The notes under the pieces are model-generated. The model had not been told where the DNA came from. It made no database searches and saw only the letters and a list, made by a program, of their open reading frames with translations. Positions 43,031 through 63,601 of a stretch of 64,000 nucleotides of DNA are shown piece by piece. Positions within the stretch are counted from its first letter, which is position 1. Each line of letters starts with the position of its first letter. The translations under genes were made by a program, and so were the position numbers. The stretch spans positions 285,794-349,793 of the IMG/VR virus record IMGVR_UViG_3300018080_000098; one strand, 5' to 3'.

Positions 43031-43659
43031 TAGACCCAGAACAATACAACCCAAATGTAAAAACCCCAAACATAACCAGAATATACAAGAGAACACAAAC
43101 AGCGAAAATAACACCAAAAGAACAAGTGGGATACAGTGGGACAAAGTGGGGAGAAGAGGGGAACATTGGGTTCCAGCCCCCTATACCCCTATATACCTCC
43201 TAAAAACCGTGTATTTCCGTGTATTTAGCCTATATAGGGCCCTATATACCCCATATTACAGGCCTTTTTGGCGATCAGATCCCCTGTTTTCCGTGTCTAC
43301 AGACCCTATTAGTCCACTATTACCCGCTCCCAACCCCTACAGATCCCCTATTACGGGTAGACTTAGTCCTATTTCTGCACCCAGATCCCCAACAAAAAAC
43401 ATGCCAATAAAAAGTAATAAATGTTTTCCTTGGCACTTGACATTGTATTGTTTGATCTGTTTTGTGCTTGGGGATCTATTATTTCCATTAAATCATGGTA
43501 ACTTTACATTGTCAAGTAAAAAATAAATTCTTTTTTCTGCGTAAGTGTGTTGACAACGTAAAGATCGTTGTTACGCGTACCCTGGTCTAATGGTTTAACC
43601 GAATACCGTAGGGGAAGGGGCTCCGGGAATTCCCGGAGCCCTGGGGGAGGGGACGCGGG

Positions 43660-43965
43660 CTAGTTGAACTGGCGGACGGGCGGACCGGCGTTGACGCAGA
43701 TGTATCGGTCCTCCTCCGGGACCTTCACTCCGCGCTCTTCGAGCCAAACCGCCAGGGCGTGCACAATGAACTTGAACGTTTCCGTCATCACGTGCAGATC
43801 GTTGTGGGGGCCTTCGGGAATCTGCCGACGCTTGATGATCAGCTTGATGGCCCTTTCCGTGGCCTTCTGCATGCCCGGCCGCTTGAGAGCATCCCTGATC
43901 TCCTGATCCCCGGCGTGCGCCGCGACCATCTTCCGGATCTTCCGGCAACGTTGCTTCAGAGTCAT
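43660..43965 (-). CDS. Hypothetical early-cassette protein
   Basis: AAAGGA RBS; own promoter/leader upstream. Confidence 0.65.
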   Translation of the reverse strand: MTLKQRCRKIRKMVAAHAGDQEIRDALKRPGMQKATERAIKLIIKRRQIPEGPHNDLHVMTETFKFIVHALAVWLEERGVKVPEEDRYICVNAGPPVRQFN

Positions 43966-44548
43966 TCACGTTCCTTTCGTTGACTGCGGTTTCCGTCGAC
44001 ACACCAAATATAATAACGCACAGCTGCATCGGCAACCCATTAAATGAAATATTTTTGACACACCACCCCAGGGGACCTTAGACTAGAACTAATGGTTTAA
44101 CCGAATACCCAGGATATAAAAAATCCCCGGGTGGCGAGAGTAGACCACCCGAGGAGAGGTCAACGGGGTGAACTGGGGTCCTTTCTTTTCCTGCGAACCC
44201 GGGCCCACCTGAATCGCAATCCGCGAAGCACCACCAGTCTCCGTTGGCTACCGGTCCGACGCGGTAACCCTGGCAGCGTTTCGCGAGCAACAGAACCAGA
44301 CAGGGAACGCGGCCACCAAAGGCCAATTGATCGTCGTGTTTCCTCTCTGCTCCTGTTCCGTCCGACCACTCAAAGATAAGTCGCCACCCGAAAAACGCAA
44401 GAGGGAAAAATGAGATATTTTTGACGCGCCGAAACGCGCCATTCGATTTAATTGAACGCGCGCCCGCGCACACGCGAGATTAGGAGTATTGGTTAAACCA
44501 ACTAGACAAGGTGACAGCCCAGAGCTCGAGCCCTGGGTGCCCCTTTGT

Positions 44549-44722
44549 CTACTCCTCTTCCAGCTTGACGCAGATGGAGATGAGGGTATCCCGATGGGTC
44601 ACGAGGTACTCGACCCCGTTTCTCTCGGGCAGCGGGATGATCGCGCCGAGCAGGTAATCGTCGCGCTTCTCTTTGAAAAGGGTACGGACGCTTTCGATAA
44701 CGTCCTTCAGTGCTTGGTCCAT
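44549..44722 (-). CDS. 57-aa hypothetical protein (not in ORF track)
   Basis: AAAGGAGG RBS; MDQALKDVIESVRTLFKEKRDDYLLG...KLEEE. Confidence 0.65.
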   Translation of the reverse strand: MDQALKDVIESVRTLFKEKRDDYLLGAIIPLPERNGVEYLVTHRDTLISICVKLEEE

Positions 44723-44736
44723 GGGACCTCCTTTGT

Positions 44737-45132
44737 TTAGCAGTAGACCTGACGCTTCAGGGCGTGCCAGTAGTTACGGTGGGCGTCCGCGGGGCGCTGG
44801 TAGCCCTTGCCGTGGCAACGGAAGCAGATACCACCGGGCCCCTTGGGTTGGCCGTTCTCGACCATGGTGACAAACTGCCCCGTACCCGCGCACCGTTTGC
44901 AGTGCCAGGACACCCGACGCGCGTACTTCACCCAGTCCTGGGGAGTGGGCTCAGTGACCCCGGCCTTTTCCATGAGCTTGCGCACTGCGGCGTCGAATTT
45001 CTCATTGGTGGGGTACTCGGCGGAGCCGGAGTAGGACACCTTGACGGTGTACTTACGCGCGGCGCGGTACGCCTTACGGCAGCCTTCATCCGTGGTGAGA
45101 TCGTATCCCTCGAATTTCGGCATTCTCGACAT
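44737..45132 (-). CDS. DnaJ-type Zn-finger-like protein
   Basis: CKRCAGTG and CFRCHGKG (CxxCxGxG) motifs. Confidence 0.7.
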   Translation of the reverse strand: MSRMPKFEGYDLTTDEGCRKAYRAARKYTVKVSYSGSAEYPTNEKFDAAVRKLMEKAGVTEPTPQDWVKYARRVSWHCKRCAGTGQFVTMVENGQPKGPGGICFRCHGKGYQRPADAHRNYWHALKRQVYC

Positions 45133-45141
45133 GGGGTACTC

Positions 45142-45357
45142 CTACCGGCACAGCCGGTGCGGGTCGTCGTTCGCCCGGCAGTTGATCCAGTTGCGCGGGT
45201 CCTCGGGCCGCGAGCGCACGTTGAGGTCCTCGTCCAGCTGGGGGATCAGGTCGCGCAGGACGTCGTTGGTCCGCTCGCGGTGCCTGAGCCACACCAGGAC
45301 GACCAGCTCCCGCTTGGCCTCACGCTTCTCCTCGTCCGTCATGTTGGGGTAGTGCAT
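45142..45357 (-). CDS. Hypothetical early-cassette protein
   Basis: Start moved to ATG 45357 (GGAG RBS). Confidence 0.65.
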   Translation of the reverse strand: MHYPNMTDEEKREAKRELVVLVWLRHRERTNDVLRDLIPQLDEDLNVRSRPEDPRNWINCRANDDPHRLCR

Positions 45358-45448
45358 GTGTGTTTCTCCGCTGCTAGGTGTTTCCGTCCGACTGCACACA
45401 AGGTAAGCACGCGCATTACATTGTCAAGAAACTTTTTTCAAAAATATT

Positions 45449-45649
45449 TCACGCGCCATGGTTAGCACCCTCCAACCATTCCTCTATTATCAAACGGGAA
45501 TACCATTTTCTTTCCCGGTCTTGTCGGCACTCCCACATAAAAGCGATCTGTTCCTCTATACTCCTACGCTCTAACCAATGAGGGCACACCTCGCAAGCGA
45601 TATGGTTCTCACCTAGGGGAAGGTTGTACGGGCAGGTGTTACAGGTCAT
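45449..45649 (-). CDS. Small Cys-rich protein
   Basis: CNTC...CEVC; ATGA-coupled. Confidence 0.55.
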   Translation of the reverse strand: MTCNTCPYNLPLGENHIACEVCPHWLERRSIEEQIAFMWECRQDRERKWYSRLIIEEWLEGANHGA

Positions 45650-45813
45650 TCGACTTCACCCGTAAGCAGAGCTCTCAGGTCTGCTTGTAGTTCACTAGCT
45701 ATAACTAGGTGTCTCTCGGTGGCCTGGGTATCCCCTTTGATGCACGCTGCTAGCGCGCGGTCTAGCTGAATCCGAACATTATCACTGTACCAGCGAATCA
45801 GATTGTTCCACAT
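45646..45813 (-). CDS. 55-aa hypothetical protein (not in ORF track)
   Basis: AAGGAGG RBS; MWNNLIRWYSDNVRIQ...LLTGEVE. Confidence 0.6.
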   Translation of the reverse strand: MWNNLIRWYSDNVRIQLDRALAACIKGDTQATERHLVIASELQADLRALLTGEVE

Positions 45814-45916
45814 GTTGCGCCTCCTTCATAAGAAGAACGCGCGTATGCGAAAAACCTGACAAGAAAAATGCGTGCCGGGGAGGGCTACTGGTTAAACCGA
45901 ATGGTAAGGGGAAGGG

Positions 45917-46090
45917 CTAGGCTGGGTCCTGCTGGACCTTACCCCGGCAGGCTTTTTTGCGCTGGGCGTTGCGCTTGTTGGGGTGGCGACCCGCGCCACT
46001 GCGCCACGAGGCGATCAGCGCGTAGGGGTTACGCTTAGCCTTCGTGGCCTTGCGCACGCGCCGCTGTTTTTTCTTTCGCCTACGTGCCAT
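45917..46090 (-). CDS. Small very basic protein
   Basis: Start moved to ATG 46090 (MARRRKKK); RNPYA motif. Confidence 0.55.
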   Translation of the reverse strand: MARRRKKKQRRVRKATKAKRNPYALIASWRSGAGRHPNKRNAQRKKACRGKVQQDPA

Positions 46091-46234
46091 GCGTACAATG
46101 TAGCAACGATGCTTTACTGCGTCAAGCGGCAACTAAAATATTTTGCACAGGATGTTAGGTTAAACCAATAAACACAGACAAAGAAAACCCGGAGCCGTGG
46201 CCCCGGGTATTAGGGAGGATAGGTTGCTAGTAGG

Positions 46235-46678
46235 TTACTGCGCCGTCTGGAGCGCCAACGAGGGGTCGATGACGGCGGCGACGACGAGGTATTTCCCTTT
46301 GACGGTCCCGAAGGACAGCAGGCCCAGCTTGGGGCGGTAGCCCAGAATACTGGTCACAGCCTGCATGGCGTGGTCCCCGGCGATTTTGCCGCGCTTTTCC
46401 TGATTGAGTACAACGATGGAGACGGAGGTTGTACTCCGCGACATGCAGCCCCGCGTGACCACGACGTAGGCGTGGCTGGTCTTGGCTTTCCCGAGCACCT
46501 TGCAGCGGGAGCTGAGCTTGCTCGGCTGGGCGGTCTGCGTTTTCTTGGGCTTGTGCGCCGTGGGGTTGTGCGTCTGCGCCGCGCAACCCGTTCCGAAAAG
46601 CAGGGAAACGAGAACGGCGAACAGCGCGCCCGCCGCCATCAGGGAAACCACTTGGCCTGCCTCTTTCAAATTGTCCAT
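46235..46678 (-). CDS. Membrane-anchored/lipoprotein-like early protein
   Basis: GGAGG RBS; hydrophobic helix ending GTGC. Confidence 0.65.
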   Translation of the reverse strand: MDNLKEAGQVVSLMAAGALFAVLVSLLFGTGCAAQTHNPTAHKPKKTQTAQPSKLSSRCKVLGKAKTSHAYVVVTRGCMSRSTTSVSIVVLNQEKRGKIAGDHAMQAVTSILGYRPKLGLLSFGTVKGKYLVVAAVIDPSLALQTAQ

Positions 46679-46836
46679 TGTTGCCTCCGCTCGCTAGTTG
46701 TTTCCGTCCGACTGCGAAAAAGATAATCACGCAACTTGACGCGGTCAAGTGACAAAATGAAATATTTTTTACGTGCATCCCCAGGGGCAGGGCTATCGGT
46801 TTAACCGAGTAGAGTACGGGGGCGCACCCCGTGCAG

Positions 46837-47022
46837 CTAAAGCCTCCTCTCCCAACTCGCATTGGGGGTGAACCAGATGCTTTCGTTGCCGCACGCGTTT
46901 CGGCGTGCCTCGGCTTCCGTCGAATATTCGGCAGCCTGTTGACGGTCGCTTGTGTAGGACCGCTCAGAGCCGGGACGCGCTACGTACTTTCCGTCACTTG
47001 TCCGCTTGATTACGTAGACCAT
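46837..47022 (-). CDS. Hypothetical early-cassette protein
   Basis: Start moved to ATG 47022 (MVYVIKRTSDGKY). Confidence 0.6.
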   Translation of the reverse strand: MVYVIKRTSDGKYVARPGSERSYTSDRQQAAEYSTEAEARRNACGNESIWFTPNASWERRL

Positions 47023-47023
47023 C

Positions 47024-47413
47024 CTAGTAGCACTCCGTCCAGTGCTCACCCGTCTCCTCGCCCCACTGGGAACGGGGCGCCAGAGCCTGCCCGGACATGT
47101 TGTAGTCCGTCTCGCACTCGTAGCAGGTGTTCGTGAACCGGGACAGTTCCACCTCTTCCCCACAGCTACACCGACCCACGCGGGGATGGCGGTAGGTCCA
47201 CTCCCGCTTGATGACCCCGCGGCAAACTACGTCAACCTCGCCGCATAAACACTTGCCAAAATTCTCGCGCGCCGCTGGGTGCATGGCGTCGATGTCCACG
47301 TTCCCGTCTTCGTCACAGTCGAACGTGAAACCCCAACCCCGATGCCCTCGGTAATCGAAGTCCAGCGTGTAGTCCACACCCGTCTCTTCGTAAGACTCCC
47401 TGATGATCTTCAT
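47024..47413 (-). CDS. Hypothetical protein with Cys pairs
   Basis: 129 aa; coupled to neighbours. Confidence 0.7.
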   Translation of the reverse strand: MKIIRESYEETGVDYTLDFDYRGHRGWGFTFDCDEDGNVDIDAMHPAARENFGKCLCGEVDVVCRGVIKREWTYRHPRVGRCSCGEEVELSRFTNTCYECETDYNMSGQALAPRSQWGEETGEHWTECY

Positions 47414-47414
47414 C

Positions 47415-47795
47415 TTAATACCCCATCACGTCGTTGTACCCGTCGCACCCGAAGGCCATCCCCGCCTGCATGGCCATCTCGTTATCCCAATCGGAATAAT
47501 CGACGGGCTGCGGGCTGAAAGATTTGATTCGGATTTCCCGATGCACGTCGGGACCGTCGAGCACCACGTACTCCGTGTCCTTGTTGGAACAGTAACCACC
47601 CTGCACCCGCTTCCCCGACTCGAGCTCCTCGACCACCTCCTTGAGATACGCCTCCGCCTCCTCCCGCGTGGCGAAAGCCGCACCCGCCCAACAGTCGTCA
47701 TCGGTGAAGGGCTCACTGCCCCACAGGTCCACCGTGTAGTCGGTGGGCTGAACGGGCTTGTTGACGGCGTTACGATCTTCGCGATAGGTATTCAT
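47415..47795 (-). CDS. Hypothetical early-cassette protein
   Basis: First gene behind promoter/leader at ~47817. Confidence 0.7.
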   Translation of the reverse strand: MNTYREDRNAVNKPVQPTDYTVDLWGSEPFTDDDCWAGAAFATREEAEAYLKEVVEELESGKRVQGGYCSNKDTEYVVLDGPDVHREIRIKSFSPQPVDYSDWDNEMAMQAGMAFGCDGYNDVMGY

Positions 47796-47922
47796 GTGTG
47801 TGACTCCGTGTGCGTTGTCCGTCCGACAAAAACAAGATAACCATGCAGCTTGACGGCGTCAAGTTTTTCCGCAAAATATTTTTGCGCGCCTGGTAGGGTT
47901 GTCGGTTTAACCAATAGACCAG

Positions 47923-47995
47923 GGTGCATGACGGAACTCGAATCCGCAACCTCCGGGACCACAACCCGGCGCTCTACCGATTGAGCTACATGCAC
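47923..47995 (-). tRNA. trnH: tRNA-His (GTG)
   Basis: Cloverleaf: acceptor GTGCATG/CATGCAC, anticodon arm CCGGG-TTGTGGT-CCCGG, T loop TTCGAGT; discriminator C; CCA and G-1 not encoded. Confidence 0.85.
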
Positions 47996-47996
47996 A

Positions 47997-48084
47997 TGGC
48001 AGGGGTAGGATTCGAACCTACGGTGGTACTCGTGGAGTGACTAGATTTACAGTCTAGCGCCTTCAACCTCTCGGCCACCCTGCC
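47997..48084 (-). tRNA. trnY: tRNA-Tyr (GTA)
   Basis: GGCAGGG acceptor, CTAGA-CTGTAAA-TCTAG anticodon arm, long variable arm, GGTTCGAATCC; CCA not encoded. Confidence 0.9.
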
Positions 48085-48090
48085 GAAAGT

Positions 48091-48170
48091 GCTTCGGGTA
48101 GGACTGAGCCCTTTTGTTGTCCTGTGGGAAGCTATCTCCACAGCCCTGTCAATTCAGAGCTACCCGAAGC
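48091..48170 (-). ncRNA. Structured RNA with 11-bp closing stem and internal hairpins, upstream of the tRNAs
   Basis: GCTTCGGGTAG/CTACCCGAAGC closing stem; internal TGTGG/CCACA and GGAC/GTCC stems. Confidence 0.45.
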
Positions 48171-48335
48171 TGTAGGGTTAAGGGAAGCGCTTCATAGGTT
48201 TCCCTCCACGCGGCCCTCTGAGTGCCCTACGTCACTGCCTCGTTAGGTCGTGGCCACTCCCTGTTTTTTGCTGGGACCATCCAGCTTCTTCGTGGGGTGG
48301 CGTCCCCACTAGCCTGTGGTTAGCAGGCACGTTCG

Positions 48336-48509
48336 TTACATCGGGATGACCAGCACCCCGCGCTTCTCTTCGTCCTGGGGAACGTCCTCGCGCTGCCCTT
48401 CGAGGTACTCCAGATACCTCGGATCGTAGACCTCCACTCGGGGCTGCGGGCGCTCACGTTCCGCGATCTCCTGAACCAGCTTCTCACTACGTCGCCAATC
48501 GATCAACAT
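48336..48509 (-). CDS. 57-aa hypothetical protein (not in ORF track)
   Basis: GGAG RBS behind leader; MLIDWRRSEKLVQEIAE...VIPM. Confidence 0.6.
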   Translation of the reverse strand: MLIDWRRSEKLVQEIAERERPQPRVEVYDPRYLEYLEGQREDVPQDEEKRGVLVIPM

Positions 48510-48596
48510 GATTCATCTCCGTGTGCTGTTTCCGTCCGACGTGAAAAATATAACAACGCGTCTTTACGTTGTCAAGAAACTTTTTCGCGCCCGGCG

Positions 48597-48809
48597 TCAA
48601 TGCACCTCTCGGTGAGGCCTCGACAGATGAGCGATGAGCGTGGCACAGCATAGCATGTTGATATGAACCTCGTCCAGCTGCTTGGCCAGCACCTTACGGG
48701 TAGCATCCGACATAGTCTCGGTCTTCAGCTTAGTGGCCAGATGCTCCACCCAACGGGAAGCCTGCTTCCCTTCCTTCATCAACAGTTCGATTGCTTCTTT
48801 GTGCGACAT
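48597..48809 (-). CDS. Hypothetical early-cassette protein
   Basis: Start moved to ATG 48809 (MSHKEA). Confidence 0.65.
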   Translation of the reverse strand: MSHKEAIELLMKEGKQASRWVEHLATKLKTETMSDATRKVLAKQLDEVHINMLCCATLIAHLSRPHREVH

Positions 48810-57228: not shown

Positions 57229-58119
57229 CTAGAACGCACTCGCCTTCAGCGGGCTACCGCAGATGGGGCAGTGGGGTACGCCGTCCTCGTCCACGTAGAT
57301 GTACCCGGCGCCCGGCTCGGGGTCCGACCCGTCCTCCATCTCCGCATCGTACTTGACGATCTCGCAGTCCTTCAGCGCCACGACGTCATTACCGTTCGGG
57401 TCACAGGCGTACTCCTCGTACCCGTTGCACAGCTCCCAGTGTGCGCCGCACGGACCACCGTCCGACCCACCATCCATCCGAAGCTGCTCGGGACGGTTCG
57501 CCGTGTCCTCACAGTAGATCGTCGCCCGCCCGTCGTCGAACATCGCGAGCTCACTGTTGCCGCTCACGTCGAAGGCCACCGCCCGGGTGTACCCACCGCG
57601 CACGTCCGCGCCGCCGTGAATTTGGAGCAGCACGTGACCACCGTCCTCGTCCTCCCAGTAACAATACTGGATGACCTGCGACAGCAGCGACTCGTGGTTG
57701 TAGGTGTTCACCGTCACCGGCGAACCCTCACCGTAGATGCCGCCGAACTCCGTGCCGTACTCCTCGGCCTCCATCTCCAGCAGCTTCATGAACTCCTCGA
57801 CACAGGCGAACCAGGACTCGTCCTCCATCTCGCCCGTCGTCGCGAAAGTGTGGAACCGCTTGTCCAACTCCTCGTTGTACTCCAGCCGGTCCTTCAGCCA
57901 GTGGTACAGGTTGAGCGTGATGTCCAGGTAGTCCCAGCTACCGTCCAGCACAGCCTCGGGCTCGTTCTCGAAAGCCCGACCCTGGTTACGTTGCCAGTGA
58001 CGACCACACGCCCCGCCACTGTCCATCATATGAATACCCGTCCGCTCGGTCAACATGTCGTGAATGACCTGAGCCGTCACGTCCTGAATGTCCTGGTCGT
58101 TGTCCTTGATGGCGTTCAT
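57229..58119 (-). CDS. Conserved-looking phage hypothetical protein
   Basis: Start moved to ATG 58119; TGIHMMDSGGACGRHWQRN, VNTYN, LLQIHGGADVRGGYT motifs. Confidence 0.75.
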   Translation of the reverse strand: MNAIKDNDQDIQDVTAQVIHDMLTERTGIHMMDSGGACGRHWQRNQGRAFENEPEAVLDGSWDYLDITLNLYHWLKDRLEYNEELDKRFHTFATTGEMEDESWFACVEEFMKLLEMEAEEYGTEFGGIYGEGSPVTVNTYNHESLLSQVIQYCYWEDEDGGHVLLQIHGGADVRGGYTRAVAFDVSGNSELAMFDDGRATIYCEDTANRPEQLRMDGGSDGGPCGAHWELCNGYEEYACDPNGNDVVALKDCEIVKYDAEMEDGSDPEPGAGYIYVDEDGVPHCPICGSPLKASAF

Positions 58120-58341
58120 TTCGCTTGCCTCCGATGCGGTTTGTTTTTTCCGTCCGACGAAACAAATATAAATTCGGCGCACAAAAAAGTCAATCAAATA
58201 TTTTTGACGCGCCGATTTTTTCGCGGGTATGCCTCCCTTCCCGCACGCACTCTATAATAGGTATACCCTACACTCTACCCCTCGAGCTCCCCGTTCGGTT
58301 TAACCATACGCCCTACCCCATACCCCTTGTCCACGTTGTTC

Positions 58342-58467
58342 GGTTTAACCAACAGACCTGCCGCGCCGCGCTGCGTCGAGCAGCCTTTATAGTCTATCCA
58401 GACCCGCCAGGAATATTTCGCACGCTGCCAAACGAATAGACTAAAGGGAATTTTGTATAGAGAGAAC
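58342..58467. repeat. Long conserved intergenic element C, copy 3
   Basis: Same blocks plus GGAATATTT.CACGCTGCC...GACTAAAGGGAA shared with copy 4. Confidence 0.8.
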
Positions 58468-58695
58468 CTACCCCTCCGGGTTGCTCCTATTACATCGACC
58501 GTTCATCGTCGAAGCCTCCCACCCCACCTCTTTGCGCTCGCGCCATTCTGCTACCGCTTTATCCACTTCGGCTTGTCGCTCCGGTGGAGGATCGGCATAG
58601 CGTTCCCTCGGTAGGATACAGTGGCACGTTGGCCCACAGCACCAACTGAATTTACACTGCTCGCAGTCATAGCGATAACGTGGTACGCGGTCCAT
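58468..58695 (-). CDS. Small Cys-rich protein
   Basis: CEQC...CCGPTCHC. Confidence 0.55.
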   Translation of the reverse strand: MDRVPRYRYDCEQCKFSWCCGPTCHCILPRERYADPPPERQAEVDKAVAEWRERKEVGWEASTMNGRCNRSNPEG

Positions 58696-58696
58696 T

Positions 58697-59179
58697 CTAC
58701 CACTCCCCCAGCCTACTTAGCTCCGTAGGATACACCCTGTCCTCCGGCAACGGGTAGTCCTCGTCCGACACGAACACGTAGCCCACCAGGCTAGTGTAGG
58801 GTGGGTTCCTGTCGTGGCTCCCGTCGTCCACCCACACTTCGTACAGTAGTACCTGCGGGTAGTCTTTCAACGGGCGCCGGGTCCTCGGCAGCACCACGTC
58901 GCCGCGTTCACTCTTGGGCTTGTCTAGTGGTCTGCTGTCCAACTCTAAGTCCAGGTCCCGAATGGTCCAGCCCTTGCCGTCGAACGCTCGCAGGTCCGTG
59001 GAAAATACACGAGCCACCCGGGGCGCCACGAGCGTAGGCTTTGTCACCGTGACCCGAGTAGGCAAGTACAGGTCCACAGGTAGCCGCATGAAAAACTGCG
59101 ACACCTTGGGGCACTGGAATTCCTCCAAGGGAATAAACTCTCCCAGCGTCACCGTGGGTTTGGGGTTGGGCTTCGGCAC
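58697..59179 (-). CDS. Hypothetical protein
   Basis: AAGGAG RBS; GTG start. Confidence 0.6.
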   Translation of the reverse strand: MPKPNPKPTVTLGEFIPLEEFQCPKVSQFFMRLPVDLYLPTRVTVTKPTLVAPRVARVFSTDLRAFDGKGWTIRDLDLELDSRPLDKPKSERGDVVLPRTRRPLKDYPQVLLYEVWVDDGSHDRNPPYTSLVGYVFVSDEDYPLPEDRVYPTELSRLGEW

Positions 59180-59189
59180 CGGCTACTCC

Positions 59190-59591
59190 TTATTTCAGTT
59201 CCGCCGTGGCACCCACGTTCTTGAGCGCCTTGACCAGCGCCAGCTTGCGACCACCCGAGAGCTTCTGGGTTCCCCGGAATTTGTTGTCCAGCTTTACCGG
59301 GGTACGTTCGGACAACTCCTTCGCCTCCTTCAGCCCAATCTCCAGGTGCTCACGCAGCGCCTTGATTACCTGGATTTTCTGTTGTCCGTGGTTTACCAGG
59401 ACAAGGCTTCCCATGATGGCGTTCTCTGCACCCTCCGGGTCCTTCACTGCTTCCGTGAACAGATGCAATACACAACGGCTCACCGTGATACCGTACATGT
59501 GATTCAGCGTACCTACCACCGCCATCGCTTCGCGCGGGGTTAGCGTGCTCAGTCCCTCGGCCAGCAGAGAAATCTTTTCCTTGTTTCGCAT
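59190..59591 (-). CDS. rplL: Ribosomal protein bL12 (L7/L12) homologue, copy 1
   Basis: NTD-like LSTLTPREAMAVV...YGITV; CTD QKIQVIKALREHLEIGLKEAKELSE; ends ALKNVGATAELK. Confidence 0.8.
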   Translation of the reverse strand: MRNKEKISLLAEGLSTLTPREAMAVVGTLNHMYGITVSRCVLHLFTEAVKDPEGAENAIMGSLVLVNHGQQKIQVIKALREHLEIGLKEAKELSERTPVKLDNKFRGTQKLSGGRKLALVKALKNVGATAELK

Positions 59592-59692
59592 TGTCTTTAG
59601 CTCCTGTGCGTTTTTCCGTCCGACGCAATCAAAAATATCAAACGCTCATTACGTTGTCAAGAAAAAAAAATCGGCGCGCGGCTTCGCCTTCA

Positions 59693-59715
59693 CTAGCTAG
59701 TTATTATCTAGCATC
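59693..59715 (+). promoter_or_regulatory. Conserved upstream motif of + strand gene (candidate phage-specific promoter), copy 1
   Basis: CTAGCTAGTTATTATCTAGCATC, near-identical to 63100-63122; both precede CAGGAG RBS and an MPAK start. Confidence 0.55.
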
Positions 59716-59739
59716 ACACCCACACAGGAGAACTCCCTT

Positions 59740-59989
59740 ATGCCTGCAAAAACGAATTAAAGTCAACGGGCAGACCTACATAGCTGCGGACGCCTACAGC
59801 CAGCAACTACTAGGAAACATCAAACAGACTATCAAGGAAGCACTCGACGCCTTCACTCTCTACAACGGGTATGCCTACGGGGCTCGAGCAGAGGAGCTAG
59901 ACGCAGGCCTTCGACAAGACCTGGAAGAAACCGAAAGCAACCTGCGCAATAAGCTAGACGCCCTCAAGAATCTCGCGGCTAGACTGTAG
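59740..59989 (+). pseudogene. GxxY-motif small gene interrupted by one extra A in an A5 run
   Basis: ATG CCT GCA AAA ACG AAT TAA; removing one A gives MPAKRIKVNGQTYIAAD..., parallel to 63146 MPAKHIQVNGHKY. Confidence 0.65.
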
Positions 59990-60013
59990 CCCTACCCCTT
60001 CCCCACGTTGTTC

Positions 60014-60137
60014 GGTTTAACCGTTCGTCCGGCTGCGCCGCGCTGCGTCGGGCAGCCTTTAGACTATCCAAACCCACAGGGAATATTTTTCACGCTGCCC
60101 AGCAGACAGACTAAAGGGAATTTTGTATAGAGAGAAG
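60014..60137. repeat. Long conserved intergenic element C, copy 4
   Basis: Near-identical to copy 3; lies where + and - genes converge. Confidence 0.8.
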
Positions 60138-60347
60138 CTGGTCTACCAACCTCTTCCAGTTCTCTATCCATTCTTTTTGTTCTTGCAGACATTCCTGACA
60201 GCGGTCCGTTTGGTCTATTTTCCCTCGACACAAAGGCTCACCGCACCTTGTTCCTCCGAGCAACTCAGGCAAAAATACCAGACGCCCAGCCTCGGGGACA
60301 AAGTCTTCGTACTTGAACCGCAGGTCCCTACCCCTTCTCCAGCCCAT
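60111..60347 (-). CDS. Hypothetical protein
   Basis: Start moved to ATG 60347; 3' end runs into element C. Confidence 0.45.
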   Translation of the reverse strand: MGWRRGRDLRFKYEDFVPEAGRLVFLPELLGGTRCGEPLCRGKIDQTDRCQECLQEQKEWIENWKRLVDQLLSIQNSL

Positions 60348-60597
60348 CGAGCAGCTTGTCCAGCACCACGTCGTGCATGAGCTTGCGGCGGATAGTGTAC
60401 CCCGAATCAAAACGAGTGTCCGCAAACTCTACCATGTTCACCATGCCCATGAACAACACCACGAAATCCTCGGTGGACATGCGCCGCAATACCCGGTCCA
60501 CGTACCAGTCCAGCCCGTAGTGGGAACTCTTCCCGTAACGCTCCTCGTCCTGAGCTTTGTCCTTCCGAGCCTGCTCTATGACTTCGCGGATAGTCAT
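60328..60597 (-). CDS. Hypothetical protein
   Basis: AGGA RBS; 89 aa. Confidence 0.6.
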   Translation of the reverse strand: MTIREVIEQARKDKAQDEERYGKSSHYGLDWYVDRVLRRMSTEDFVVLFMGMVNMVEFADTRFDSGYTIRRKLMHDVVLDKLLDGLEKG

Positions 60598-60609
60598 GGT
60601 TCCTACCTG

Positions 60610-60828
60610 CTACTCCTGCACGTGAAGACTACCCGCGAGCATCCCCCACAATTCGTCCAGCGTGACACCGGACTCCAAGATGTACTCCACTTGTTCGGTA
60701 AGCCCACCGTTGTTGATGGCGCTCGCTTCACCGGCTTTCAGGTCGTGGACAATCTCGTCCAGGTCCACAGACTCGCACCCGTCTGCCTCCAGCAGCTTGA
60801 CCACCCGGTCCAACTCTTTCGCGTCCAT
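60610..60828 (-). CDS. Hypothetical phage protein
   Basis: LDEIVHDLKAGEASAINNGGLTEQVEYI motif. Confidence 0.65.
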   Translation of the reverse strand: MDAKELDRVVKLLEADGCESVDLDEIVHDLKAGEASAINNGGLTEQVEYILESGVTLDELWGMLAGSLHVQE

Positions 60829-60831
60829 GAC

Positions 60832-60996
60832 TTACTCCTGCTCCTTTTTCTTTTGGAGCCCCACCCCTCCACACTTCGTGCAGCGGTCCACACCCTCCGG
60901 GTCTTTCAGACTCGAACCGTACCCGTCGCAGTGATCACAGAATTCGTACCCGTGAGCCTCGGGGTTCATCATTACGTCGAAGTCCAGAACTTTCAT
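60832..60996 (-). CDS. Small DnaJ-type Zn-finger-like protein
   Basis: Start moved to ATG 60996; CDHCDGYG and CTKCGGVG. Confidence 0.6.
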   Translation of the reverse strand: MKVLDFDVMMNPEAHGYEFCDHCDGYGSSLKDPEGVDRCTKCGGVGLQKKKEQE

Positions 60997-61077
60997 TTCC
61001 GTCTCTCCGTTTCGCAATTCGTGCGATCGAAAATATCAAACGCGCTTTACGCCGTCAAGAAAAAATTTCGCAAGCAG

Positions 61078-61518
61078 CTAAAAGTCGTGAACGTCCCCAC
61101 ACTCCGGACACGCCGCGCAAACCTCCGCACACACTATCCCGGTGTCCGGGTCGCAGTAGGGCAGCACTGTGTGCGCCGCTCCGCAACACTCGAACTCTCG
61201 ATACAACTCCGGTCCAGGTTCCGGGACCTCCCCGTAGCTGAACACAAACTGAGGGTTCACCACCGCGTACTCCCGACTGCCCCCGTCCTTCACCGAAGCG
61301 TGGGAACGGAAAGACTTGAGCGGACTCACCACCAACCGGCGTACCGTCCGGTTATACTCCCCCTCCTCGATCAGTGCCACGCGAGGTAAACTCGTCTCAC
61401 GCTCGTACCCCAGAACACACTCCCGACTGTACCCGTGAATAGTCGCGTGCCCATCCTCCCCCACCGTGAACGCTACCGTCCACACCGAATCAATCAGCCT
61501 CTTCGTTGCGTACCGCAT
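61078..61518 (-). CDS. Hypothetical protein
   Basis: AAGGAG RBS; C-terminal Cys cluster. Confidence 0.65.
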   Translation of the reverse strand: MRYATKRLIDSVWTVAFTVGEDGHATIHGYSRECVLGYERETSLPRVALIEEGEYNRTVRRLVVSPLKSFRSHASVKDGGSREYAVVNPQFVFSYGEVPEPGPELYREFECCGAAHTVLPYCDPDTGIVCAEVCAACPECGDVHDF

Positions 61519-61528
61519 CCGTCTCTCC

Positions 61529-61930
61529 TTACCTGAACTCCACCACCGCTCCTACACCCCGAAGCGCCTGCGCCAAAGCCAGCTTCCGCCGACCCGTCAA
61601 CTTCTCCCGATTCCGGTACTTGTTCCCCAGTACCACAGGGACCGCCTCCGACAAGTCCTTGGCTTCCTTCAGCCCGATCTCCAGATGCTCCCGCAGCACC
61701 TTGATCACCTGGATCTTCCGCTCCCCATACCCCACCAGCATCAGCTTCCCCACTACCGCCTCCGCTGACCCCTCCGGATCCTGCGCAGCCTCCCCCAGCA
61801 GATGCACCACACAACGACTCACCGTGAGCCCATACGTGTGGTTCATCGTTCCCACCACAGCCATCGCCTCGCGAGGCGTCAACGTGCTCAACGCCTCCGC
61901 CAACAAAGAAATCTTTTCGTGGTTACGCAT
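61529..61930 (-). CDS. rplL: Ribosomal protein bL12 (L7/L12) homologue, copy 2
   Basis: Paralogue of 59190-59591; RKIQVIKVLREHLEIGLKEAKDLSE; ends ALRGVGAVVEFR. Confidence 0.8.
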   Translation of the reverse strand: MRNHEKISLLAEALSTLTPREAMAVVGTMNHTYGLTVSRCVVHLLGEAAQDPEGSAEAVVGKLMLVGYGERKIQVIKVLREHLEIGLKEAKDLSEAVPVVLGNKYRNREKLTGRRKLALAQALRGVGAVVEFR

Positions 61931-62011
61931 CGCTCTAGCTCCTGTTGTTTCCGTCCGACGCGATCAAAAATATCAAATCAACTTGACGCTGTCAAGAAAA
62001 AATTTCGGCGG

Positions 62012-62533
62012 CTACTTCTCTTCTTTCCTTAACCGCAACACACCTTCTCCACCCGGGTCTACGCCCGCAGTGACACTCACCACAGACTCCACCCCTACCG
62101 TGTCCCCGTCCCAATACTCACAGTTGTCCGCGTGAGCTACCAGCGTAGCCCGAGTATCCTTGTCGAGAATATCCTGCACGCTATCAGCTTCCACGTAGAA
62201 CTCGACTTCCTCGACCACCGTCCGCTGCATCTTGACCAAGTAGACCTTGCGCTTGTCGTACTCCGTCCCGTCCGCGCAGACTACTTTCTCCAGAGTCTTC
62301 GACGTGCCTGCCCCTATCAGCTGCACCCCAACCTCCGGATTGTCCGCGTGTACCGAAATAGCAGACCCCTCCCGACCCGCTATCCTCTGTGCCAAACTGC
62401 GCGCAGTCTCCAGAGCTTCCACATGGGTAGGGATACTATCCTCGTACAGTTGCCACTCAGGCTTGTACGCTCGGTAAATACCCACCACCCAAAAAGACCC
62501 TCGGTGTTTTACGTGAACTTCCACAGCAGCCAT
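62012..62533 (-). CDS. Hypothetical protein
   Basis: AGGAG RBS; 173 aa. Confidence 0.65.
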   Translation of the reverse strand: MAAVEVHVKHRGSFWVVGIYRAYKPEWQLYEDSIPTHVEALETARSLAQRIAGREGSAISVHADNPEVGVQLIGAGTSKTLEKVVCADGTEYDKRKVYLVKMQRTVVEEVEFYVEADSVQDILDKDTRATLVAHADNCEYWDGDTVGVESVVSVTAGVDPGGEGVLRLRKEEK

Positions 62534-62542
62534 TGGCTTCTC

Positions 62543-62995
62543 CTACGCCCAAAGACTCTTGAGCTTCGTCTTCCGCGCCCGCAGGTACACCCCCCGCCCC
62601 ATGGCGAACCCGGAATAAATATCTCCCTCGAACTCGAAGCGAAGGTAGGTCCGCTCGCCCCCGAAGTTGTCGCGGCACTCGTTCAGAATGTTCACCCTGG
62701 CCGACAGTACCCCACCGGGCCAGTTGGTCACACTCTTCCCGTCACTCGACAGGTAAGCGAACACCCTACCCGTCTCCTGAATGTGAGCCTTCTCTCTTTC
62801 CGTTGCACACTCGTAGCAGAACGTCTCCCCCGTCTCCGGGTTCTCCCCGTACCCCGTGGTCATCGGCATACCGTGGGGATGCAGATGTCTCGGTGCGCTC
62901 GGCTTGTGTCCGCAGTCCAGCTTCCGCGCGTAGTACGCATCGGCAAAGTTCTGCGCGAACAGGCTACGTCTCTCTTCTTCACTCGTGTTGTGCAT
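62543..62995 (-). CDS. Hypothetical phage protein
   Basis: Start moved to ATG 62995; FCYECA, AYLSSDGKSVTNWPG motifs. Confidence 0.7.
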   Translation of the reverse strand: MHNTSEEERRSLFAQNFADAYYARKLDCGHKPSAPRHLHPHGMPMTTGYGENPETGETFCYECATEREKAHIQETGRVFAYLSSDGKSVTNWPGGVLSARVNILNECRDNFGGERTYLRFEFEGDIYSGFAMGRGVYLRARKTKLKSLWA

Positions 62996-63099
62996 TTTCT
63001 CGCTCCACTGTTTCCGTCCAACAAATCGAATATAAATCGCCGCGCCGCGTTTGTCAATCAAATATTTTTCACGCACCGATTTTTTGCGGCTCACCTTCC

Positions 63100-63122
63100 C
63101 TAGATAGTTATTCTCTAGCATC
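63100..63122 (+). promoter_or_regulatory. Conserved upstream motif of + strand gene, copy 2
   Basis: CTAGATAGTTATTCTCTAGCATC. Confidence 0.55.
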
Positions 63123-63145
63123 GTACACCAACAGGAGCATTTATC

Positions 63146-63409
63146 ATGCCTGCGAAACATATTCAGGTCAACGGCCACAAGTATCAACTCGTTACCGCAG
63201 ACCAGGACGAGCTAAACGCACTGCGCCAGCAATTAGAGCGCCACAAAAAACAGGCGAAAGAAATGTTCTTCGCCCTCGGCTACATCATATCGTGGATAGT
63301 AAAAGACGAGGTCGCCCCCAAGGTAGGAGAAGAAGTAGCGAAGGATATAAGGAGTAGGCTGGAGAGTATCAGAAACAACCTACGTTCATTAGGGTGGCCG
63401 TCCGGATAA
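63146..63409 (+). CDS. Small GxxY-motif protein on the + strand within the early region
   Basis: CAGGAG RBS; MPAKHIQVNGHKYQLVTA. Confidence 0.7.
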   Translation: MPAKHIQVNGHKYQLVTADQDELNALRQQLERHKKQAKEMFFALGYIISWIVKDEVAPKVGEEVAKDIRSRLESIRNNLRSLGWPSG

Positions 63410-63462
63410 CCCCTCAAGCTCCATCCCTACCCCCTGAGCGTACACCCACCTCCCCGTCGTTC

Positions 63463-63596
63463 GGTTTAACCATTCGTCCCGCTGCGCCGCGGCGCATCGA
63501 AGCAGCTCACCAACCCTTTAGACTATCCAGATGCGACAACAATATTTTTGAAGGTGCGAAGCGGTTAGACTATCCACAATTTTGTATAGAGAGAAC
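63463..63596. repeat. Long conserved intergenic element C, copy 5
   Basis: GGTTTAACC...GCTGCGCCGC...CCTTTAGACTATCCAGAT...TAGACTATCCA...TTTTGTATAGAGAGAAC. Confidence 0.75.
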
Positions 63597-63601
63597 CTAC
63601 C

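What the first reader, a model, noticed from the sequence alone, without database searches (positions are those of the whole stretch)
43590..63600. A 20-kb array of stand-alone expression cassettes with a conserved +1 leader GTCGGACGGAAAC
Seen: over 20 modules with fixed order on the - strand: GGTTWAACC, GC block, AAAATATTT UP-like element, TTGACN (sometimes TTGCGG), 16-17 bp, TAnnTT, ~7 nt, GTCGGACGGAAAC, RBS, 1-4 small ORFs or RNAs, hairpin. The 13-mer sits at the predicted transcription start, so every early mRNA would begin with the same sequence. Established: SPO1/T5-like phages cluster host-takeover genes behind strong host-RNAP promoters, and some mycobacteriophages have start-associated sequences. 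Inference: the leader is an operator for coordinated shut-off or a shared RNA tag (stabilising, translation-enhancing or protein-bound). Cassette duplications (bL12 pair, KVSxKG pair) suggest the modules are mobile units.
Basis: partly seen in the sequence, partly recalled or inferred. Interest (0 to 1): 0.7.

Follow-up and report, generated by a model that had tools for sequence, protein, structure and literature searches.

The report
Phage early leaders matched by antisense RNA
A 350-kb uncultivated phage drives about 45 small early-gene cassettes from host-type promoters whose transcripts share a 13-base start, and the same phage encodes a conserved tRNA-like small RNA with a perfect complement to that start, which points to one antisense RNA controlling a whole early gene set.

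Summary
In window 43590-63600 there are 20 minus-strand sigma-70-type promoters (TTGACN or TTGCGN, 16-17 nt, TAnnTT), each followed after 6-7 nt by GTCGGAYGGAAAC. There are 25 GGTTWAACC palindromes, placed after terminator-like hairpins. The array is larger than reported: about 51 kb, running across the genome ends. It is not uniform. A second leader class (..TTGCGAAACGGAGA) sits behind the same promoter type.

The 13-mer is kept in relatives found by protein homology (62-72% identity) while promoter spacers diverge. It occurs in at least 29 metagenome contigs (GC 44-60%) and was not found as a feature of bacterial genomes.

The decisive result lies outside the window, at genome 26636-26759 (minus strand). 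It is a 124-nt tRNA-like RNA gene with its own promoter. One apical loop holds a perfect 13-nt complement of leader 1. A second loop holds a 14-nt complement of leader 2 plus its Shine-Dalgarno sequence. Four diverged homologues keep both boxes, and one stem covaries.

The best reading is that the leader is an RNA pairing site for coordinated post-transcriptional control, similar in logic to the P1 C4 and P4 CI antisense RNAs. No transcript data exist, so the start sites, the RNA itself and the direction of the effect are all inferred.

The parts
43590..64000 (-). Window part of the early cassette array. The array continues past the window's right end, across the genome end, to about 31 kb of the genome.
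63010..63057 (-). L1 promoter plus leader GTTGGACGGAAAC (-35 at 63057, leader 63022-63010)
61947..61995 (-). L1 promoter plus leader GTCGGACGGAAAC, upstream of bL12 homologue 1
59612..59660 (-). L1 promoter plus leader GTCGGACGGAAAA, upstream of bL12 homologue 2
58146..58193 (-). L1 promoter plus leader, upstream of the 296-aa gene used to find relatives
56284..56332 (-). L1 promoter with variant leader GTCGGACGCACCCGAC (5' hairpin) and a 62-nt UTR; KVSxKG gene 1
55487..55534 (-). L1 promoter with leader GTCGGACGGAGCA and a 67-nt UTR; KVSxKG gene 2
54869..54915 (-). L1 promoter plus leader
54314..54360 (-). L1 promoter plus leader GTCGGACGGACAA
53777..53824 (-). L1 promoter plus leader
53174..53221 (-). 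L1 promoter plus leader ATCGGACGGAAAC
52432..52478 (-). L1 promoter plus leader GTCGGATGGAAAA
52002..52048 (-). L1 promoter plus leader
51211..51257 (-). L1 promoter plus leader GTCGGAAGGAAAC
50164..50210 (-). L1 promoter plus leader
48821..48868 (-). L1 promoter plus leader, directly followed by GGAG
48528..48575 (-). L1 promoter plus leader; the cassette ends with tRNA-Tyr and tRNA-His
47815..47862 (-). L1 promoter plus leader GTCGGACGGACAA
46700..46748 (-). L1 promoter plus leader
45380..45427 (-). L1 promoter plus leader
44354..44400 (-). L1 promoter plus leader GTCGGACGGAACA; it drives a roughly 250-nt structured stretch with no convincing ORF
43989..44035 (-). Promoter with shortened leader GTCGACGGAAAC
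61004..61058 (-). L2-class promoter: same -35 and -10 type, leader ..TTGCGAAACGGAGA (61004-61017), no GTCGGA
43592..63471 (.). 25 GGTTWAACC palindromes. First bases: 43592, 44094, 44491, 45890, 46158, 46798, 47904, 48910, 49359, 50289, 51322, 52093, 52529, 53318, 53897, 54447, 55008, 55683, 55726, 56458, 56510, 58297, 58342, 60014, 63463. Each lies 10-25 nt after a terminator-like hairpin and 81-231 nt before the next +1.
43502..61996 (-). 12 copies of the near-palindrome CTTKAC-N3-GTMAAG, either overlapping the -35 or standing about 60 nt upstream of it (for example 61982-61996, 54400-54414, 47849-47863)
47922..48084 (-). tRNA-His(gtg) and tRNA-Tyr(gta) at the end of a cassette
48920..49293 (-). 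Non-coding cassette: its own promoter (49293-49264) without GTCGGA, then a roughly 200-nt RNA with acceptor-like and T-arm-like helices

Best explanation
The cassettes are early genes of a 350-kb phage transcribed by the host sigma-70 RNA polymerase. The 13-mer forms the first 13 nucleotides of one class of early transcripts (L1). Its most likely role is as an RNA pairing site. The phage encodes a 124-nt small RNA at genome 26636-26759 (minus strand), 26.7 kb beyond the window's right end on the circular map, with its own sigma-70-type promoter. A tRNA-like scaffold closes the RNA: a 6-bp acceptor-like stem and a 5-bp T-arm-like hairpin. The RNA presents two apical loops. Loop 1 is the exact complement of GUCGGACGGAAAC. 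Loop 2 is the exact complement of UUGCGAAACGGAGA, which is the second leader class (L2) including its Shine-Dalgarno sequence. Pairing with loop 2 would cover the ribosome binding site. Pairing with loop 1 would sequester the 5' end of L1 messages. One stable RNA could therefore act on most early cassettes at once, as a timer or shut-off, or as a switch between the two classes. What is shown: the motifs, their positions, their conservation, the complementarity, and the conservation and fold of the small RNA. What is inferred: the transcription start sites, that the RNA is made, that pairing happens in vivo, and whether the effect is repression, decay or protection.
For: (1) The genome holds an exact reverse complement of the 13-mer outside promoters only once. 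It lies 31 nt from an exact 14-nt complement of the L2 leader, in one short conserved non-coding stretch. The L2 14-mer has 0.01 expected matches in that 14-kb locus. (2) Homologues sit in the same gene neighbourhood in three further lineages whose flanking protein is 61-77% identical. All keep GUGGUUUCCGUCCGACAAC and CUCCGUUUCG unchanged, while loop flanks and sequence outside the RNA diverge. Conservation begins about 7 nt after a TTGACA-16/17-TAnAnT promoter and ends at the closing stem. (3) The stem of hairpin 2 is kept by different sequences (GCUUGC/GCAAGC against CUCAC/GUGAG), and the long stem shows a U-A to C-G change. (4) Both boxes lie in apical loops in all four homologues. Unpaired probability is 0.55-0.63 for box 1 and 0.67-0.84 for box 2, against 0.36-0.42 for the whole RNA. 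The always-open part of box 1 (CCGAC) pairs with GUCGG, the invariant start of the leader. (5) Perfect duplexes are predicted at -22.9 and -22.8 kcal/mol. Of early translation-start regions, 51 of 79 pair at -16 kcal/mol or better with one of the boxes, against 32 of 310 elsewhere. Reversed boxes show no difference. (6) The 13 conserved leader positions are exactly the 13 complementary positions. Nothing upstream of the predicted +1 or beyond +13 pairs. (7) The leader is anchored to the -10 (6-7 nt in 26 of 26) rather than to the start codon (24-67 nt). When the spacing is 7 nt, the G is still the nearest purine. (8) All 16 orthologous promoter pairs keep the motif. Identity is 0.80 over the motif, about 0.66 at positions not used to define it, against 0.34-0.44 in the spacer, discriminator and flanks. 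(9) The commonest leader variants, C7 to U and C3 to U, would still form G-U pairs with the RNA. (10) L2 promoters share the same core elements but lack the 13-mer, so the 13-mer is not needed for promoter function as such.
Against: There are no transcript data. No RNA run was listed, so neither the start sites nor the small RNA are demonstrated. Only four distinct homologues of the RNA were found, so covariation is thin, and one homologue (L189) weakens the hairpin-2 stem. Part of box 1 is predicted to pair weakly within its own loop. No lineage with a changed leader could be paired with its own small RNA, so the key covariation test is missing. The enrichment for box 1 is partly circular, because the RNA was found through the motif. 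One RNA gene against about 45 strong promoters raises a stoichiometry problem unless the RNA is very stable or acts through a nuclease. An additional DNA-level role of the same bases is not excluded.
Confidence: 0.6

Rival explanations
1. DNA operator. A phage protein binds the double-stranded 13-mer at +1 to +13 and blocks host RNA polymerase at all L1 promoters, giving transcriptional shut-off. This would resemble the asymmetric 13-bp stoperators of Cluster A mycobacteriophages.
For: The motif is asymmetric, has one orientation, and overlaps the region RNA polymerase must occupy. It also occurs on a cassette with no convincing ORF at 44354. Stoperators set a precedent for about 13-bp asymmetric sites present in tens of copies (own knowledge; contrasted with SAS in PMC3203893).
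Against: Relatives insert or delete units after the invariant GTCGGA (GTCGGAACGGAAAC, GTCGGAAACGGAAACGGAAAC, GTCGGAAAC), which changes the spacing within the site. The site never occurs at another position or in the other orientation. No candidate binding protein was identified. This model does not explain the conserved small RNA with exact complements of both leader classes.
Confidence: 0.14
2. Promoter-intrinsic initial transcribed sequence. The GC- and purine-rich first 9-13 bases fix the start site and speed promoter escape from very strong promoters (UP element, near-consensus -35 and -10). No trans-acting factor is involved.
For: The position relative to the -10 is strict, and the strongest conservation covers the first 9 nt, about the length of the initial RNA-DNA hybrid. 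The promoters are near-consensus with AT-rich upstream tracts. That transcribed sequence affects escape is established for T5 N25 (own knowledge).
Against: L2 promoters have the same -35, spacer type and -10 but a quite different transcribed sequence. Escape effects depend weakly on sequence and would not hold an exact 13-mer across phages of 44-60% GC. The small RNA's complementarity is left unexplained.
Confidence: 0.12
3. Protein-bound or ribosome-bound leader. The unstructured, U-poor 5' UTR with repeated CGGA units acts as a translation enhancer or standby site, or as a binding site for a GGA-recognising RNA-binding protein of the CsrA type or a phage protein.
For: UTRs are 24-39 nt, 10% U against 20.5% background, and fold weakly (-0.13 against -0.25 kcal/mol per nt). 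The units resemble the local Shine-Dalgarno sequence CGGAG, and unit number varies among relatives.
Against: Each CGGA offers only about 3 bp to the anti-Shine-Dalgarno sequence. The second GGA is not invariant (GGCAAAC, GGGAAAC). No RNA-binding protein was identified. The anchoring to +1 is not explained.
Confidence: 0.09
4. Common descent only. The promoters are recent copies of one cassette and the 13-mer has no function of its own.
For: Some cassettes are duplicated (bL12 pair, KVSxKG pair).
Against: Spacers, discriminators and UP regions differ among promoter subtypes while the 13-mer is kept. It is retained at 16 of 16 orthologous promoters in relatives where flanks are 34-44% identical, and in contigs of 44-60% GC.
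Confidence: 0.03

Closest known systems
C4 antisense RNA of phages P1/P7 and CI RNA of satellite phage P4 (Rfam C4 family)
   Same: A small phage RNA with short loop sequences complementary to target sites in phage transcripts, including a ribosome binding site, shaped so that its precursor is an RNase P substrate. The RNase P processing of C4 is cited in PMC11143913. The two-loop/two-target design and the P4 details are from my own knowledge.
   Different: C4 and CI control one operon for immunity in temperate elements. Here the predicted targets are dozens of separate early cassettes in two leader classes, one target being the extreme 5' end of the messages. No Rfam C4 match was found at E up to 10. 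The RNA is longer (124 nt) and has an explicit acceptor-like and T-arm-like closure.
T4 RegA (translational repressor) and RegB (endoribonuclease cutting GGAG) acting on early mRNAs
   Same: Coordinated post-transcriptional shut-off of many early messages through a shared short feature in the translation initiation region (own knowledge).
   Different: Those effectors are proteins. Here the candidate effector is an RNA, and one target is the 5' terminus rather than the Shine-Dalgarno sequence.
Start-associated sequences (SAS) of Cluster K mycobacteriophages
   Same: A 13-bp asymmetric repeat, 11-19 copies, one orientation, in non-structural gene regions next to larger intergenic gaps, function unknown, conserved across subclusters (PMC3203893).
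   Different: [quoted passage not shown] Here the motif is fixed 6-7 nt after the -10 and 24-67 nt from the start codon. The sequences are unrelated.
Stoperators of Cluster A mycobacteriophages (L5 gp71 sites)
   Same: Asymmetric sites of about 13 bp in tens of copies, oriented with transcription, giving genome-wide silencing (own knowledge; mentioned in PMC3203893).
   Different: Stoperators are protein-bound DNA sites scattered between genes. These sites are only at +1, vary in internal spacing among relatives, and have an RNA complement encoded by the phage.
Host-RNAP early promoter clusters of T5, SPO1 and T4
   Same: Many strong sigma-70/sigma-A-type promoters with AT-rich upstream elements in front of small host-takeover genes. 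The phage supplies sigma factors rather than a polymerase (background from own knowledge).
   Different: To my knowledge none has an invariant 13-nt transcript start, a second defined leader class, or a per-cassette boundary palindrome.
KorB/ParB operator networks (for the GGTTWAACC palindromes only)
   Same: Many copies of one short palindrome at variable distances from promoters, together with a ParB_N-domain protein encoded in the same region (KorB biology from own knowledge).
   Different: No binding evidence exists. The sites are positioned relative to terminators, and a 52%-identity relative uses GGGAWTCCC instead.

Membership tests
Sigma-70-type (host RNAP) promoters | -35 TTGACA-like and -10 TATAAT-like hexamers 16-18 nt apart | tested here: met
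   24 consensus sites against 6.7 +/- 2.7 in shuffles; 26 parsed promoters with 16-17 nt spacers
Sigma-70-type (host RNAP) promoters | Transcription starts 6-9 nt after the -10, shown experimentally | not testable with these tools
   No RNA run was listed; +1 is inferred from spacing
Sigma-70-type (host RNAP) promoters | The phage lacks its own RNA polymerase for these genes | tested here: inconclusive
   No PF00562 hit, with positive controls. PF00940 had no hit, but its control also failed. One sigma70_r2 ORF was found at 157.9 kb.
Mycobacteriophage start-associated sequences (SAS) | Repeat lies within a few nt of the start codon and includes the ribosome binding site | tested here: not met
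   The motif is 24-67 nt from the start codon and fixed to the -10; definition from PMC3203893
Mycobacteriophage start-associated sequences (SAS) | Sequence GGGATAGGAGCCC | tested here: not met
   The consensus here is GTCGGAYGGAAAC
Stoperators (Cluster A mycobacteriophages) | Bound by the phage repressor as duplex DNA | not testable with these tools
   No repressor candidate was found
C4/CI antisense RNA family (Rfam) | Match to the Rfam covariance model | tested here: not met
   No C4 hit at E up to 10 on the small-RNA locus
C4/CI antisense RNA family (working principle) | Loop sequences complementary to target sites in phage mRNAs, one covering a ribosome binding site | tested here: met
   13-nt and 14-nt perfect complements in apical loops, conserved in four lineages
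C4/CI antisense RNA family (working principle) | tRNA-like shape processed by RNase P | tested here: inconclusive
   An acceptor-like 6-bp stem and a T-arm-like 5-bp hairpin are invariant. The T-loop sequence is canonical only in this phage. Processing is not testable.
tRNA | Cloverleaf recognised by ARAGORN or Rfam tRNA | tested here: not met
   Not called by ARAGORN on the genome and no Rfam tRNA hit
ParB/KorB operator system (GGTTWAACC) | A ParB-family protein is encoded by the element | tested here: met
   ParB_N 1.9e-12 in the 289-aa ORF at genome 24650-25519
ParB/KorB operator system (GGTTWAACC) | That protein binds the palindrome | not tested
   Inference only

The most novel reading that the evidence does not exclude
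The small RNA is a two-headed master regulator that treats the two leader classes in opposite ways. It would silence L2 messages by covering their Shine-Dalgarno sequence. It would clamp the triphosphate 5' end of L1 messages in a 13-bp helix, either shielding them from 5'-end-dependent decay or, with its tRNA-like body, presenting the duplex to RNase P or another nuclease as a natural external guide sequence. This would give an RNA-only temporal switch inside the early programme of a whole clade of huge phages.
Probability: 0.15. Interest if true: 0.9.

Novelty: new variant of a known kind. Interest (0 to 1): 0.72.

Why it matters
Phage antisense RNAs are known as single-operon immunity devices (P1 C4, P4 CI, lambda OOP). 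If this reading holds, one trans-acting RNA addresses about 50 independently transcribed early cassettes through two standard leaders. That would be a regulon-scale RNA control system in a virus. It would explain why a transcript start can be conserved as strongly as a -10 element across phages of 44-60% GC. It also gives a directly testable pair of short sequences, leader and loop, that can be moved into reporters without culturing the unknown host. It would supply a compact orthogonal promoter-leader-sRNA toolkit. Finally, it flags a widespread, uncharacterised group of sediment and seawater huge phages with an unusually ordered early region: promoter, leader, small ORFs, terminator, boundary palindrome.

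Tried and rejected
1. Transcript evidence: two run searches found only DNA metagenomes (8 runs) and no RNA run.
2. Rfam: only the two tRNAs scored in window 42000-64000, and nothing meaningful scored on the small-RNA locus.
3. A conserved 5' hairpin in the leader was rejected. UTRs fold more weakly than controls (mean z +0.33), and only the 56296 variant forms GTCGG/CCGAC.
4. The flanking inverted repeat GTGTGC...GCACAC is present in only a few promoters and does not covary.
5. Host origin of the motif was rejected. A scan of 596 Gb of prokaryote genomes gave 22 scattered single hits, which is chance level.
6. First IMG/VR scans were uninformative. The 14-base pattern gave only chance single hits, single-protein locus searches gave none, and later scans returned only a second record of the same phage.
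7. Distant relatives of the 296-aa protein (39-45% identity; L122-L125, L127) lack the architecture.
8. The apparent plus-strand ORF at genome 26685 ('LSDGN', with an L2-like ribosome binding site) was rejected. It is the antisense image of the small RNA.
9. Duplex folding of whole 124-nt RNA against targets was uninformative, giving long unspecific duplexes. It was replaced by loop-box tests.
10. Pfam, PHROG and PDB sequence searches of 20+ cassette proteins gave only bL12, one PHROG of unknown function and coiled-coil noise.
11. The second tRNA-like RNA in the window carries an 11-of-13 anti-leader match (49118-49130), but that match lies in a predicted stem. Only a near-identical homologue was found, so it is treated as chance.
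12. A resemblance of the 13-mer to a 16S rRNA segment, and of the L2 leader to the crRNA 5' tag, were recalled from memory only and not pursued.

Full report
**What the window is.** The window is the last 64 kb of a single-contig, 349,793-bp virus record (GC 53.7%). IMG/VR classes it as complete with direct terminal repeats. The same sequence appears in the metagenome collection as Ga0180433_10000009. Runs that hold it are sediment and seawater DNA metagenomes. No RNA polymerase beta-type domain was found, and the controls for that search were positive. One sigma-70 region-2 ORF lies at 157.9 kb. The T7-type polymerase search found nothing, but its control also failed. The phage therefore most likely uses the host polymerase and redirects it later with its own sigma factor.

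**Checking the observation.**
- GTCGGACGGAAAC with up to two mismatches occurs 22 times in the window against 2.1 expected.
- Parsing the minus strand gives 20 units in the window of the form TTGACN (or TTGCGN/TTGTGN), 16-17 nt, TAnnTT, 6-7 nt, GTCGGA...
- Genome-wide there are 26 such units.
- Consensus scans confirm an excess of sigma-70-like sites (24 against 6.7) and of terminator-like hairpins (38 against 18.8).
- Information content at +7 to +13, which played no part in selecting the sites, is 0.9-1.7 bits per position, comparable to the -10.
- Simple gene calls using GC3 and a ribosome binding site show one to four small ORFs per cassette. Almost all lack any Pfam or PHROG match. The exceptions are two full-length bL12 homologues.

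**GGTTWAACC palindromes.** The 9-mer occurs 30 times in the genome, 29 of them in the early region, against 1.6 expected. It lies 10-25 nt after the terminator-like hairpin and T-rich tail of each cassette. Its distance to the next +1 varies from 81 to 231 nt. It is therefore positioned relative to the cassette end, not relative to the next promoter.

**Two corrections to the observation.**
- The array runs on across the genome ends to about 31 kb, roughly 51 kb in all, entirely on the minus strand.
- It contains a second leader class, L2. One promoter in the window (leader box 61004-61017) and about ten outside it have the same -35, spacer type and -10. Instead of GTCGGA.., they carry ..ATTG(N)GAAACGGAGA running into the Shine-Dalgarno sequence.
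- L2 dominates the 7-31 kb part of the early region, and L1 dominates the 329-349 kb part.
- An L2-like box also precedes an internal gene that has no promoter (genome 3074-3139). L2 therefore belongs to the translation start region rather than to the promoter.

**Is the 13-mer under selection?** I found relatives independently of the motif, through the 296-aa protein encoded behind the promoter at 58158.
- Contigs at 72% and 62% protein identity (L119, L120) are syntenic and carry the same promoter-leader design.
- All 16 orthologous promoter pairs have the motif 4-8 nt after a TAnnnT.
- Identity is 0.80 over the 13-mer, about 0.66 at positions not used for parsing. It is 0.34 in spacers, 0.41 in discriminators, 0.38 just downstream and 0.44 upstream.
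- Relatives keep GTCGGA invariant but vary what follows: GTCGGAACGGAAAC, GTCGGAAACGGAAACGGAAAC, GTCGGAAAC, GTCGGACGGCAAAC.
- A 52%-identity relative (L126) has GTCGCGCAAGAAAAC at the same place and uses the palindrome GGGAWTCCC instead of GGTTWAACC.
- Relatives at 39-45% identity lack the design.
- A metagenome scan for promoter plus leader returned more than 120 contigs. At least 29 of the 80 listed are true relatives, with several such promoters and palindromes, and their GC ranges from 44.5 to 60.7%. These contigs were found through the motif, so this count is biased.
- The same scan over 596 Gb of prokaryote genomes gave 22 scattered single hits, which is chance level.
- The motif is therefore a feature of a phage clade, not of a host.

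**What the leader is not.** It forms no conserved hairpin. The UTRs are short (mostly 24-39 nt), U-poor (10% against 20.5%) and weakly folded. The motif is tied to the -10 and not to the start codon, which separates it from mycobacteriophage start-associated sequences. No Rfam family matches it.

**The decisive lead.** Outside promoters, the only exact copy of the 13-mer in the genome lies on the opposite strand at 26717. At first I read it as part of a plus-strand ORF.

It is instead the antisense image of a minus-strand non-coding gene. A TTGACA-16-TATACT promoter is followed after 7 nt by a 124-nt sequence at genome 26636-26759. That sequence opens with GGAGCG and closes with CCAGG-7 nt-CCUGG and CGCUCC, giving an acceptor-like stem plus a T-arm-like hairpin. 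ARAGORN and Rfam do not call it a tRNA.

Inside it are two boxes:
- GUUUCCGUCCGAC, the perfect complement of the L1 leader.
- UCUCCGUUUCGCAA, 31 nt further on, the perfect complement of the L2 leader including GGAG.

**Conservation of the small RNA.** I used the neighbouring 368-aa protein as an anchor. That recovered the same gene order in three more lineages with 61-77% protein identity: the 368-aa gene, a small gene, this RNA, a 63-65-aa gene, a methyltransferase, and a ParB_N gene, with a BrxL-like gene upstream.
- Each lineage has the RNA, with its own promoter at the same distance.
- GUGGUUUCCGUCCGACAAC and CUCCGUUUCG are invariant, while neighbouring loop and linker bases change. Similarity stops at the RNA's ends.
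- The stem of hairpin 2 is maintained by different sequences in L276 (CUCAC/GUGAG against GCUUGC/GCAAGC).
- The long stem shows a U-A to C-G exchange.

**Accessibility and pairing.**
- In all four homologues the boxes sit in apical loops. Unpaired probabilities are 0.55-0.63 for box 1 and 0.67-0.84 for box 2, against 0.36-0.42 overall.
- The constantly open part of box 1, CCGAC, faces the invariant GUCGG at the transcript start.
- Perfect duplexes are predicted at about -23 kcal/mol each.
- Among my rough gene calls, 51 of 79 early translation-start regions pair at -16 kcal/mol or better with one of the two boxes, against 32 of 310 elsewhere.
- At -18 kcal/mol, box 2 alone gives 22% against 1% (Fisher p = 2.6e-10). 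Reversed boxes show no difference.
- In L276 the loop reads CCUCCG and its messages mostly carry CGGAGG. In this phage the loop reads UCUCCG and messages mostly carry CGGAGA. The L278 lineage would form G-U pairs. This is consistent but based on small numbers.

**How it most likely works.** Host RNA polymerase fires all early cassettes and the small-RNA gene. The RNA is stabilised by its tRNA-like closure and may be trimmed by tRNA-processing enzymes. As it accumulates, it pairs through loop 2 with the Shine-Dalgarno region of L2 messages, and with the CGGAG of many L1 messages. Through loop 1 it pairs with the extreme 5' end of L1 messages.

This explains several features:
- why exactly 13 nt are conserved;
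- why conservation begins at the predicted +1;
- why the motif has a fixed orientation and a fixed distance to the -10, while its distance to the start codon is free;
- why C-to-U variants are tolerated;
- why the same promoters come with two alternative leaders.

The sign of the effect on L1 is open. It could be occlusion, induced decay, or protection of the 5' end. All transcript-level steps are inferred, because no RNA data exist.

**Rivals.**
- A protein operator of the stoperator type remains possible, perhaps in addition. It fits poorly with the variable unit number after GTCGGA, and no binding protein was found.
- A purely promoter-intrinsic role is weakened by the L2 promoters and by the exactness of conservation across GC contents.
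- A protein- or ribosome-binding leader fits the U-poor, unstructured UTRs but not the anchoring to +1.
- Descent alone is contradicted by the conservation pattern.

**Comparison with known systems.**
- The working principle is closest to the C4 RNA of P1/P7 and the CI RNA of P4. The RNase P processing of C4 is cited in PMC11143913; the remaining details are from my own knowledge. The Rfam C4 model does not match, and the predicted target set is regulon-sized.
- In outcome it resembles T4 RegA and RegB (own knowledge).
- It shares with Cluster K SAS only the form of a 13-bp asymmetric repeat (PMC3203893).
- I therefore file it as a new variant of a known kind.

**Cassette mobility.** Relatives differ by whole-cassette insertions and by rearrangements. 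For example, the non-coding cassette plus the 70-aa cassette at 49290-48597 is absent from L120, and homology breaks about 12 nt after the GGTTAAACC site. The bL12 cassettes have no counterpart in L119 or L120. This shows modular gain and loss, not active mobility.

Noticed in passing
Window 43592-63471 (25 sites); genome 24650-25519 (minus strand) for the ParB_N gene: GGTTWAACC marks nearly every cassette end: 29 of 30 genomic copies lie in the early region. A 52%-identity relative uses GGGAWTCCC in the same place. A ParB_N-domain protein (1.9e-12) is encoded in the early region, so a KorB/ParB-like binding protein is a lead. It was not tested.
   Followed up: partly
Window 61982-61996, 54400-54414, 49279-49293, 47849-47863, 46735-46749 and seven more: A 15-bp near-palindrome, CTTKAC-N3-GTMAAG, either includes the -35 hexamer or stands alone about 60 nt upstream of other promoters, sometimes inverted. 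It looks like an operator for a dimeric protein. Counts are 15 and 25 genome hits for the two half-patterns against 0.3-0.5 expected.
   Followed up: partly
Window 63579-63594, 60120-60135, 58450-58465, 56617-56632, 55823-55838 (box A), each with box B about 50-60 nt downstream: A composite element of about 130 nt follows the last stop codon of some operons: TTCTCTCTATACAAAAT, a variable stretch, TCTGGATAGWCTA(TA)AAGG, a GC hairpin, then GGTTAAACC. Box A has 10 exact copies, all on the minus strand in the early region. There is no Rfam match. It could be a second promoter type, a processing site or a small RNA.
   Followed up: partly
Window 48920-49293 (minus strand): A second tRNA-like non-coding cassette has its own promoter without GTCGGA, an acceptor-like GCCCCA/UGGGGC stem and a canonical-looking T arm. 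It contains a mini-ORF (AGGAGG, 9 nt, ATG AAG TGA) and an 11-of-13 anti-leader match that lies in a predicted stem. Only a 97% identical homologue was found.
   Followed up: partly
Window 46090-46126 (minus strand): The promoter TTGACG-17-TACATT is followed after 6 nt by ATG. This is a probable leaderless mRNA for a 57-aa, very basic protein (MARRRKKKQRR..).
   Followed up: no
Window 42811-43030 (minus strand), within the AT-richer non-coding stretch 42570-43500: Ten copies of TGTTCCA lie within 220 nt, all on one strand, with GGGGATCT repeats nearby. They sit directly at the downstream end of the array. This looks like an iteron-type origin or a packaging region.
   Followed up: partly
Window 63146-63409 (+), about 59630-59989 (+), 2640 (+); genome about 5100-5990 (+) and 8400-9000 (+): A family of divergently oriented genes has the N-terminal motif ..YI.V.G..Y.L. 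Two of them are preceded by CTAGNTAGTTATTNTCTAGCATC. The copy at about 59640 seems to need a 1-nt frame correction in an A run. Further paralogues lie in the first 10 kb of the window.
   Followed up: no
Window 61529-61930 and 59190-59591 (minus strand): Two full-length bL12 (L7/L12) homologues, 69% identical, each sit in their own L1 cassette. Their N-terminal part also resembles the bL12 dimerisation domain, so they may enter the ribosomal stalk. No counterpart was seen in L119 or L120.
   Followed up: partly
Window 63602-64000, continuing at genome 1-117: An ORF reads across the record's ends through an 18-nt tandem repeat (CCCGAGCATCCCCGTACA) that forms the 'terminal repeat'. The record is therefore probably a circularly closed assembly rather than one with true long terminal repeats.
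   Followed up: no
Genome 29492-30910 and 25924-26331 (minus strand), outside the window: A BrxL-like Lon-type ATPase (4e-102) and a small methyltransferase lie among the early cassettes next to the small RNA. They may be defence or counter-defence genes.
   Followed up: no
Window 57229-58119 (minus strand): The 296-aa early protein belongs to a large uncharacterised family with 722 database hits (PHROG 11344, C-terminal zinc-ribbon-like CxxC). The family is spread over very different phage contigs.
   Followed up: partly
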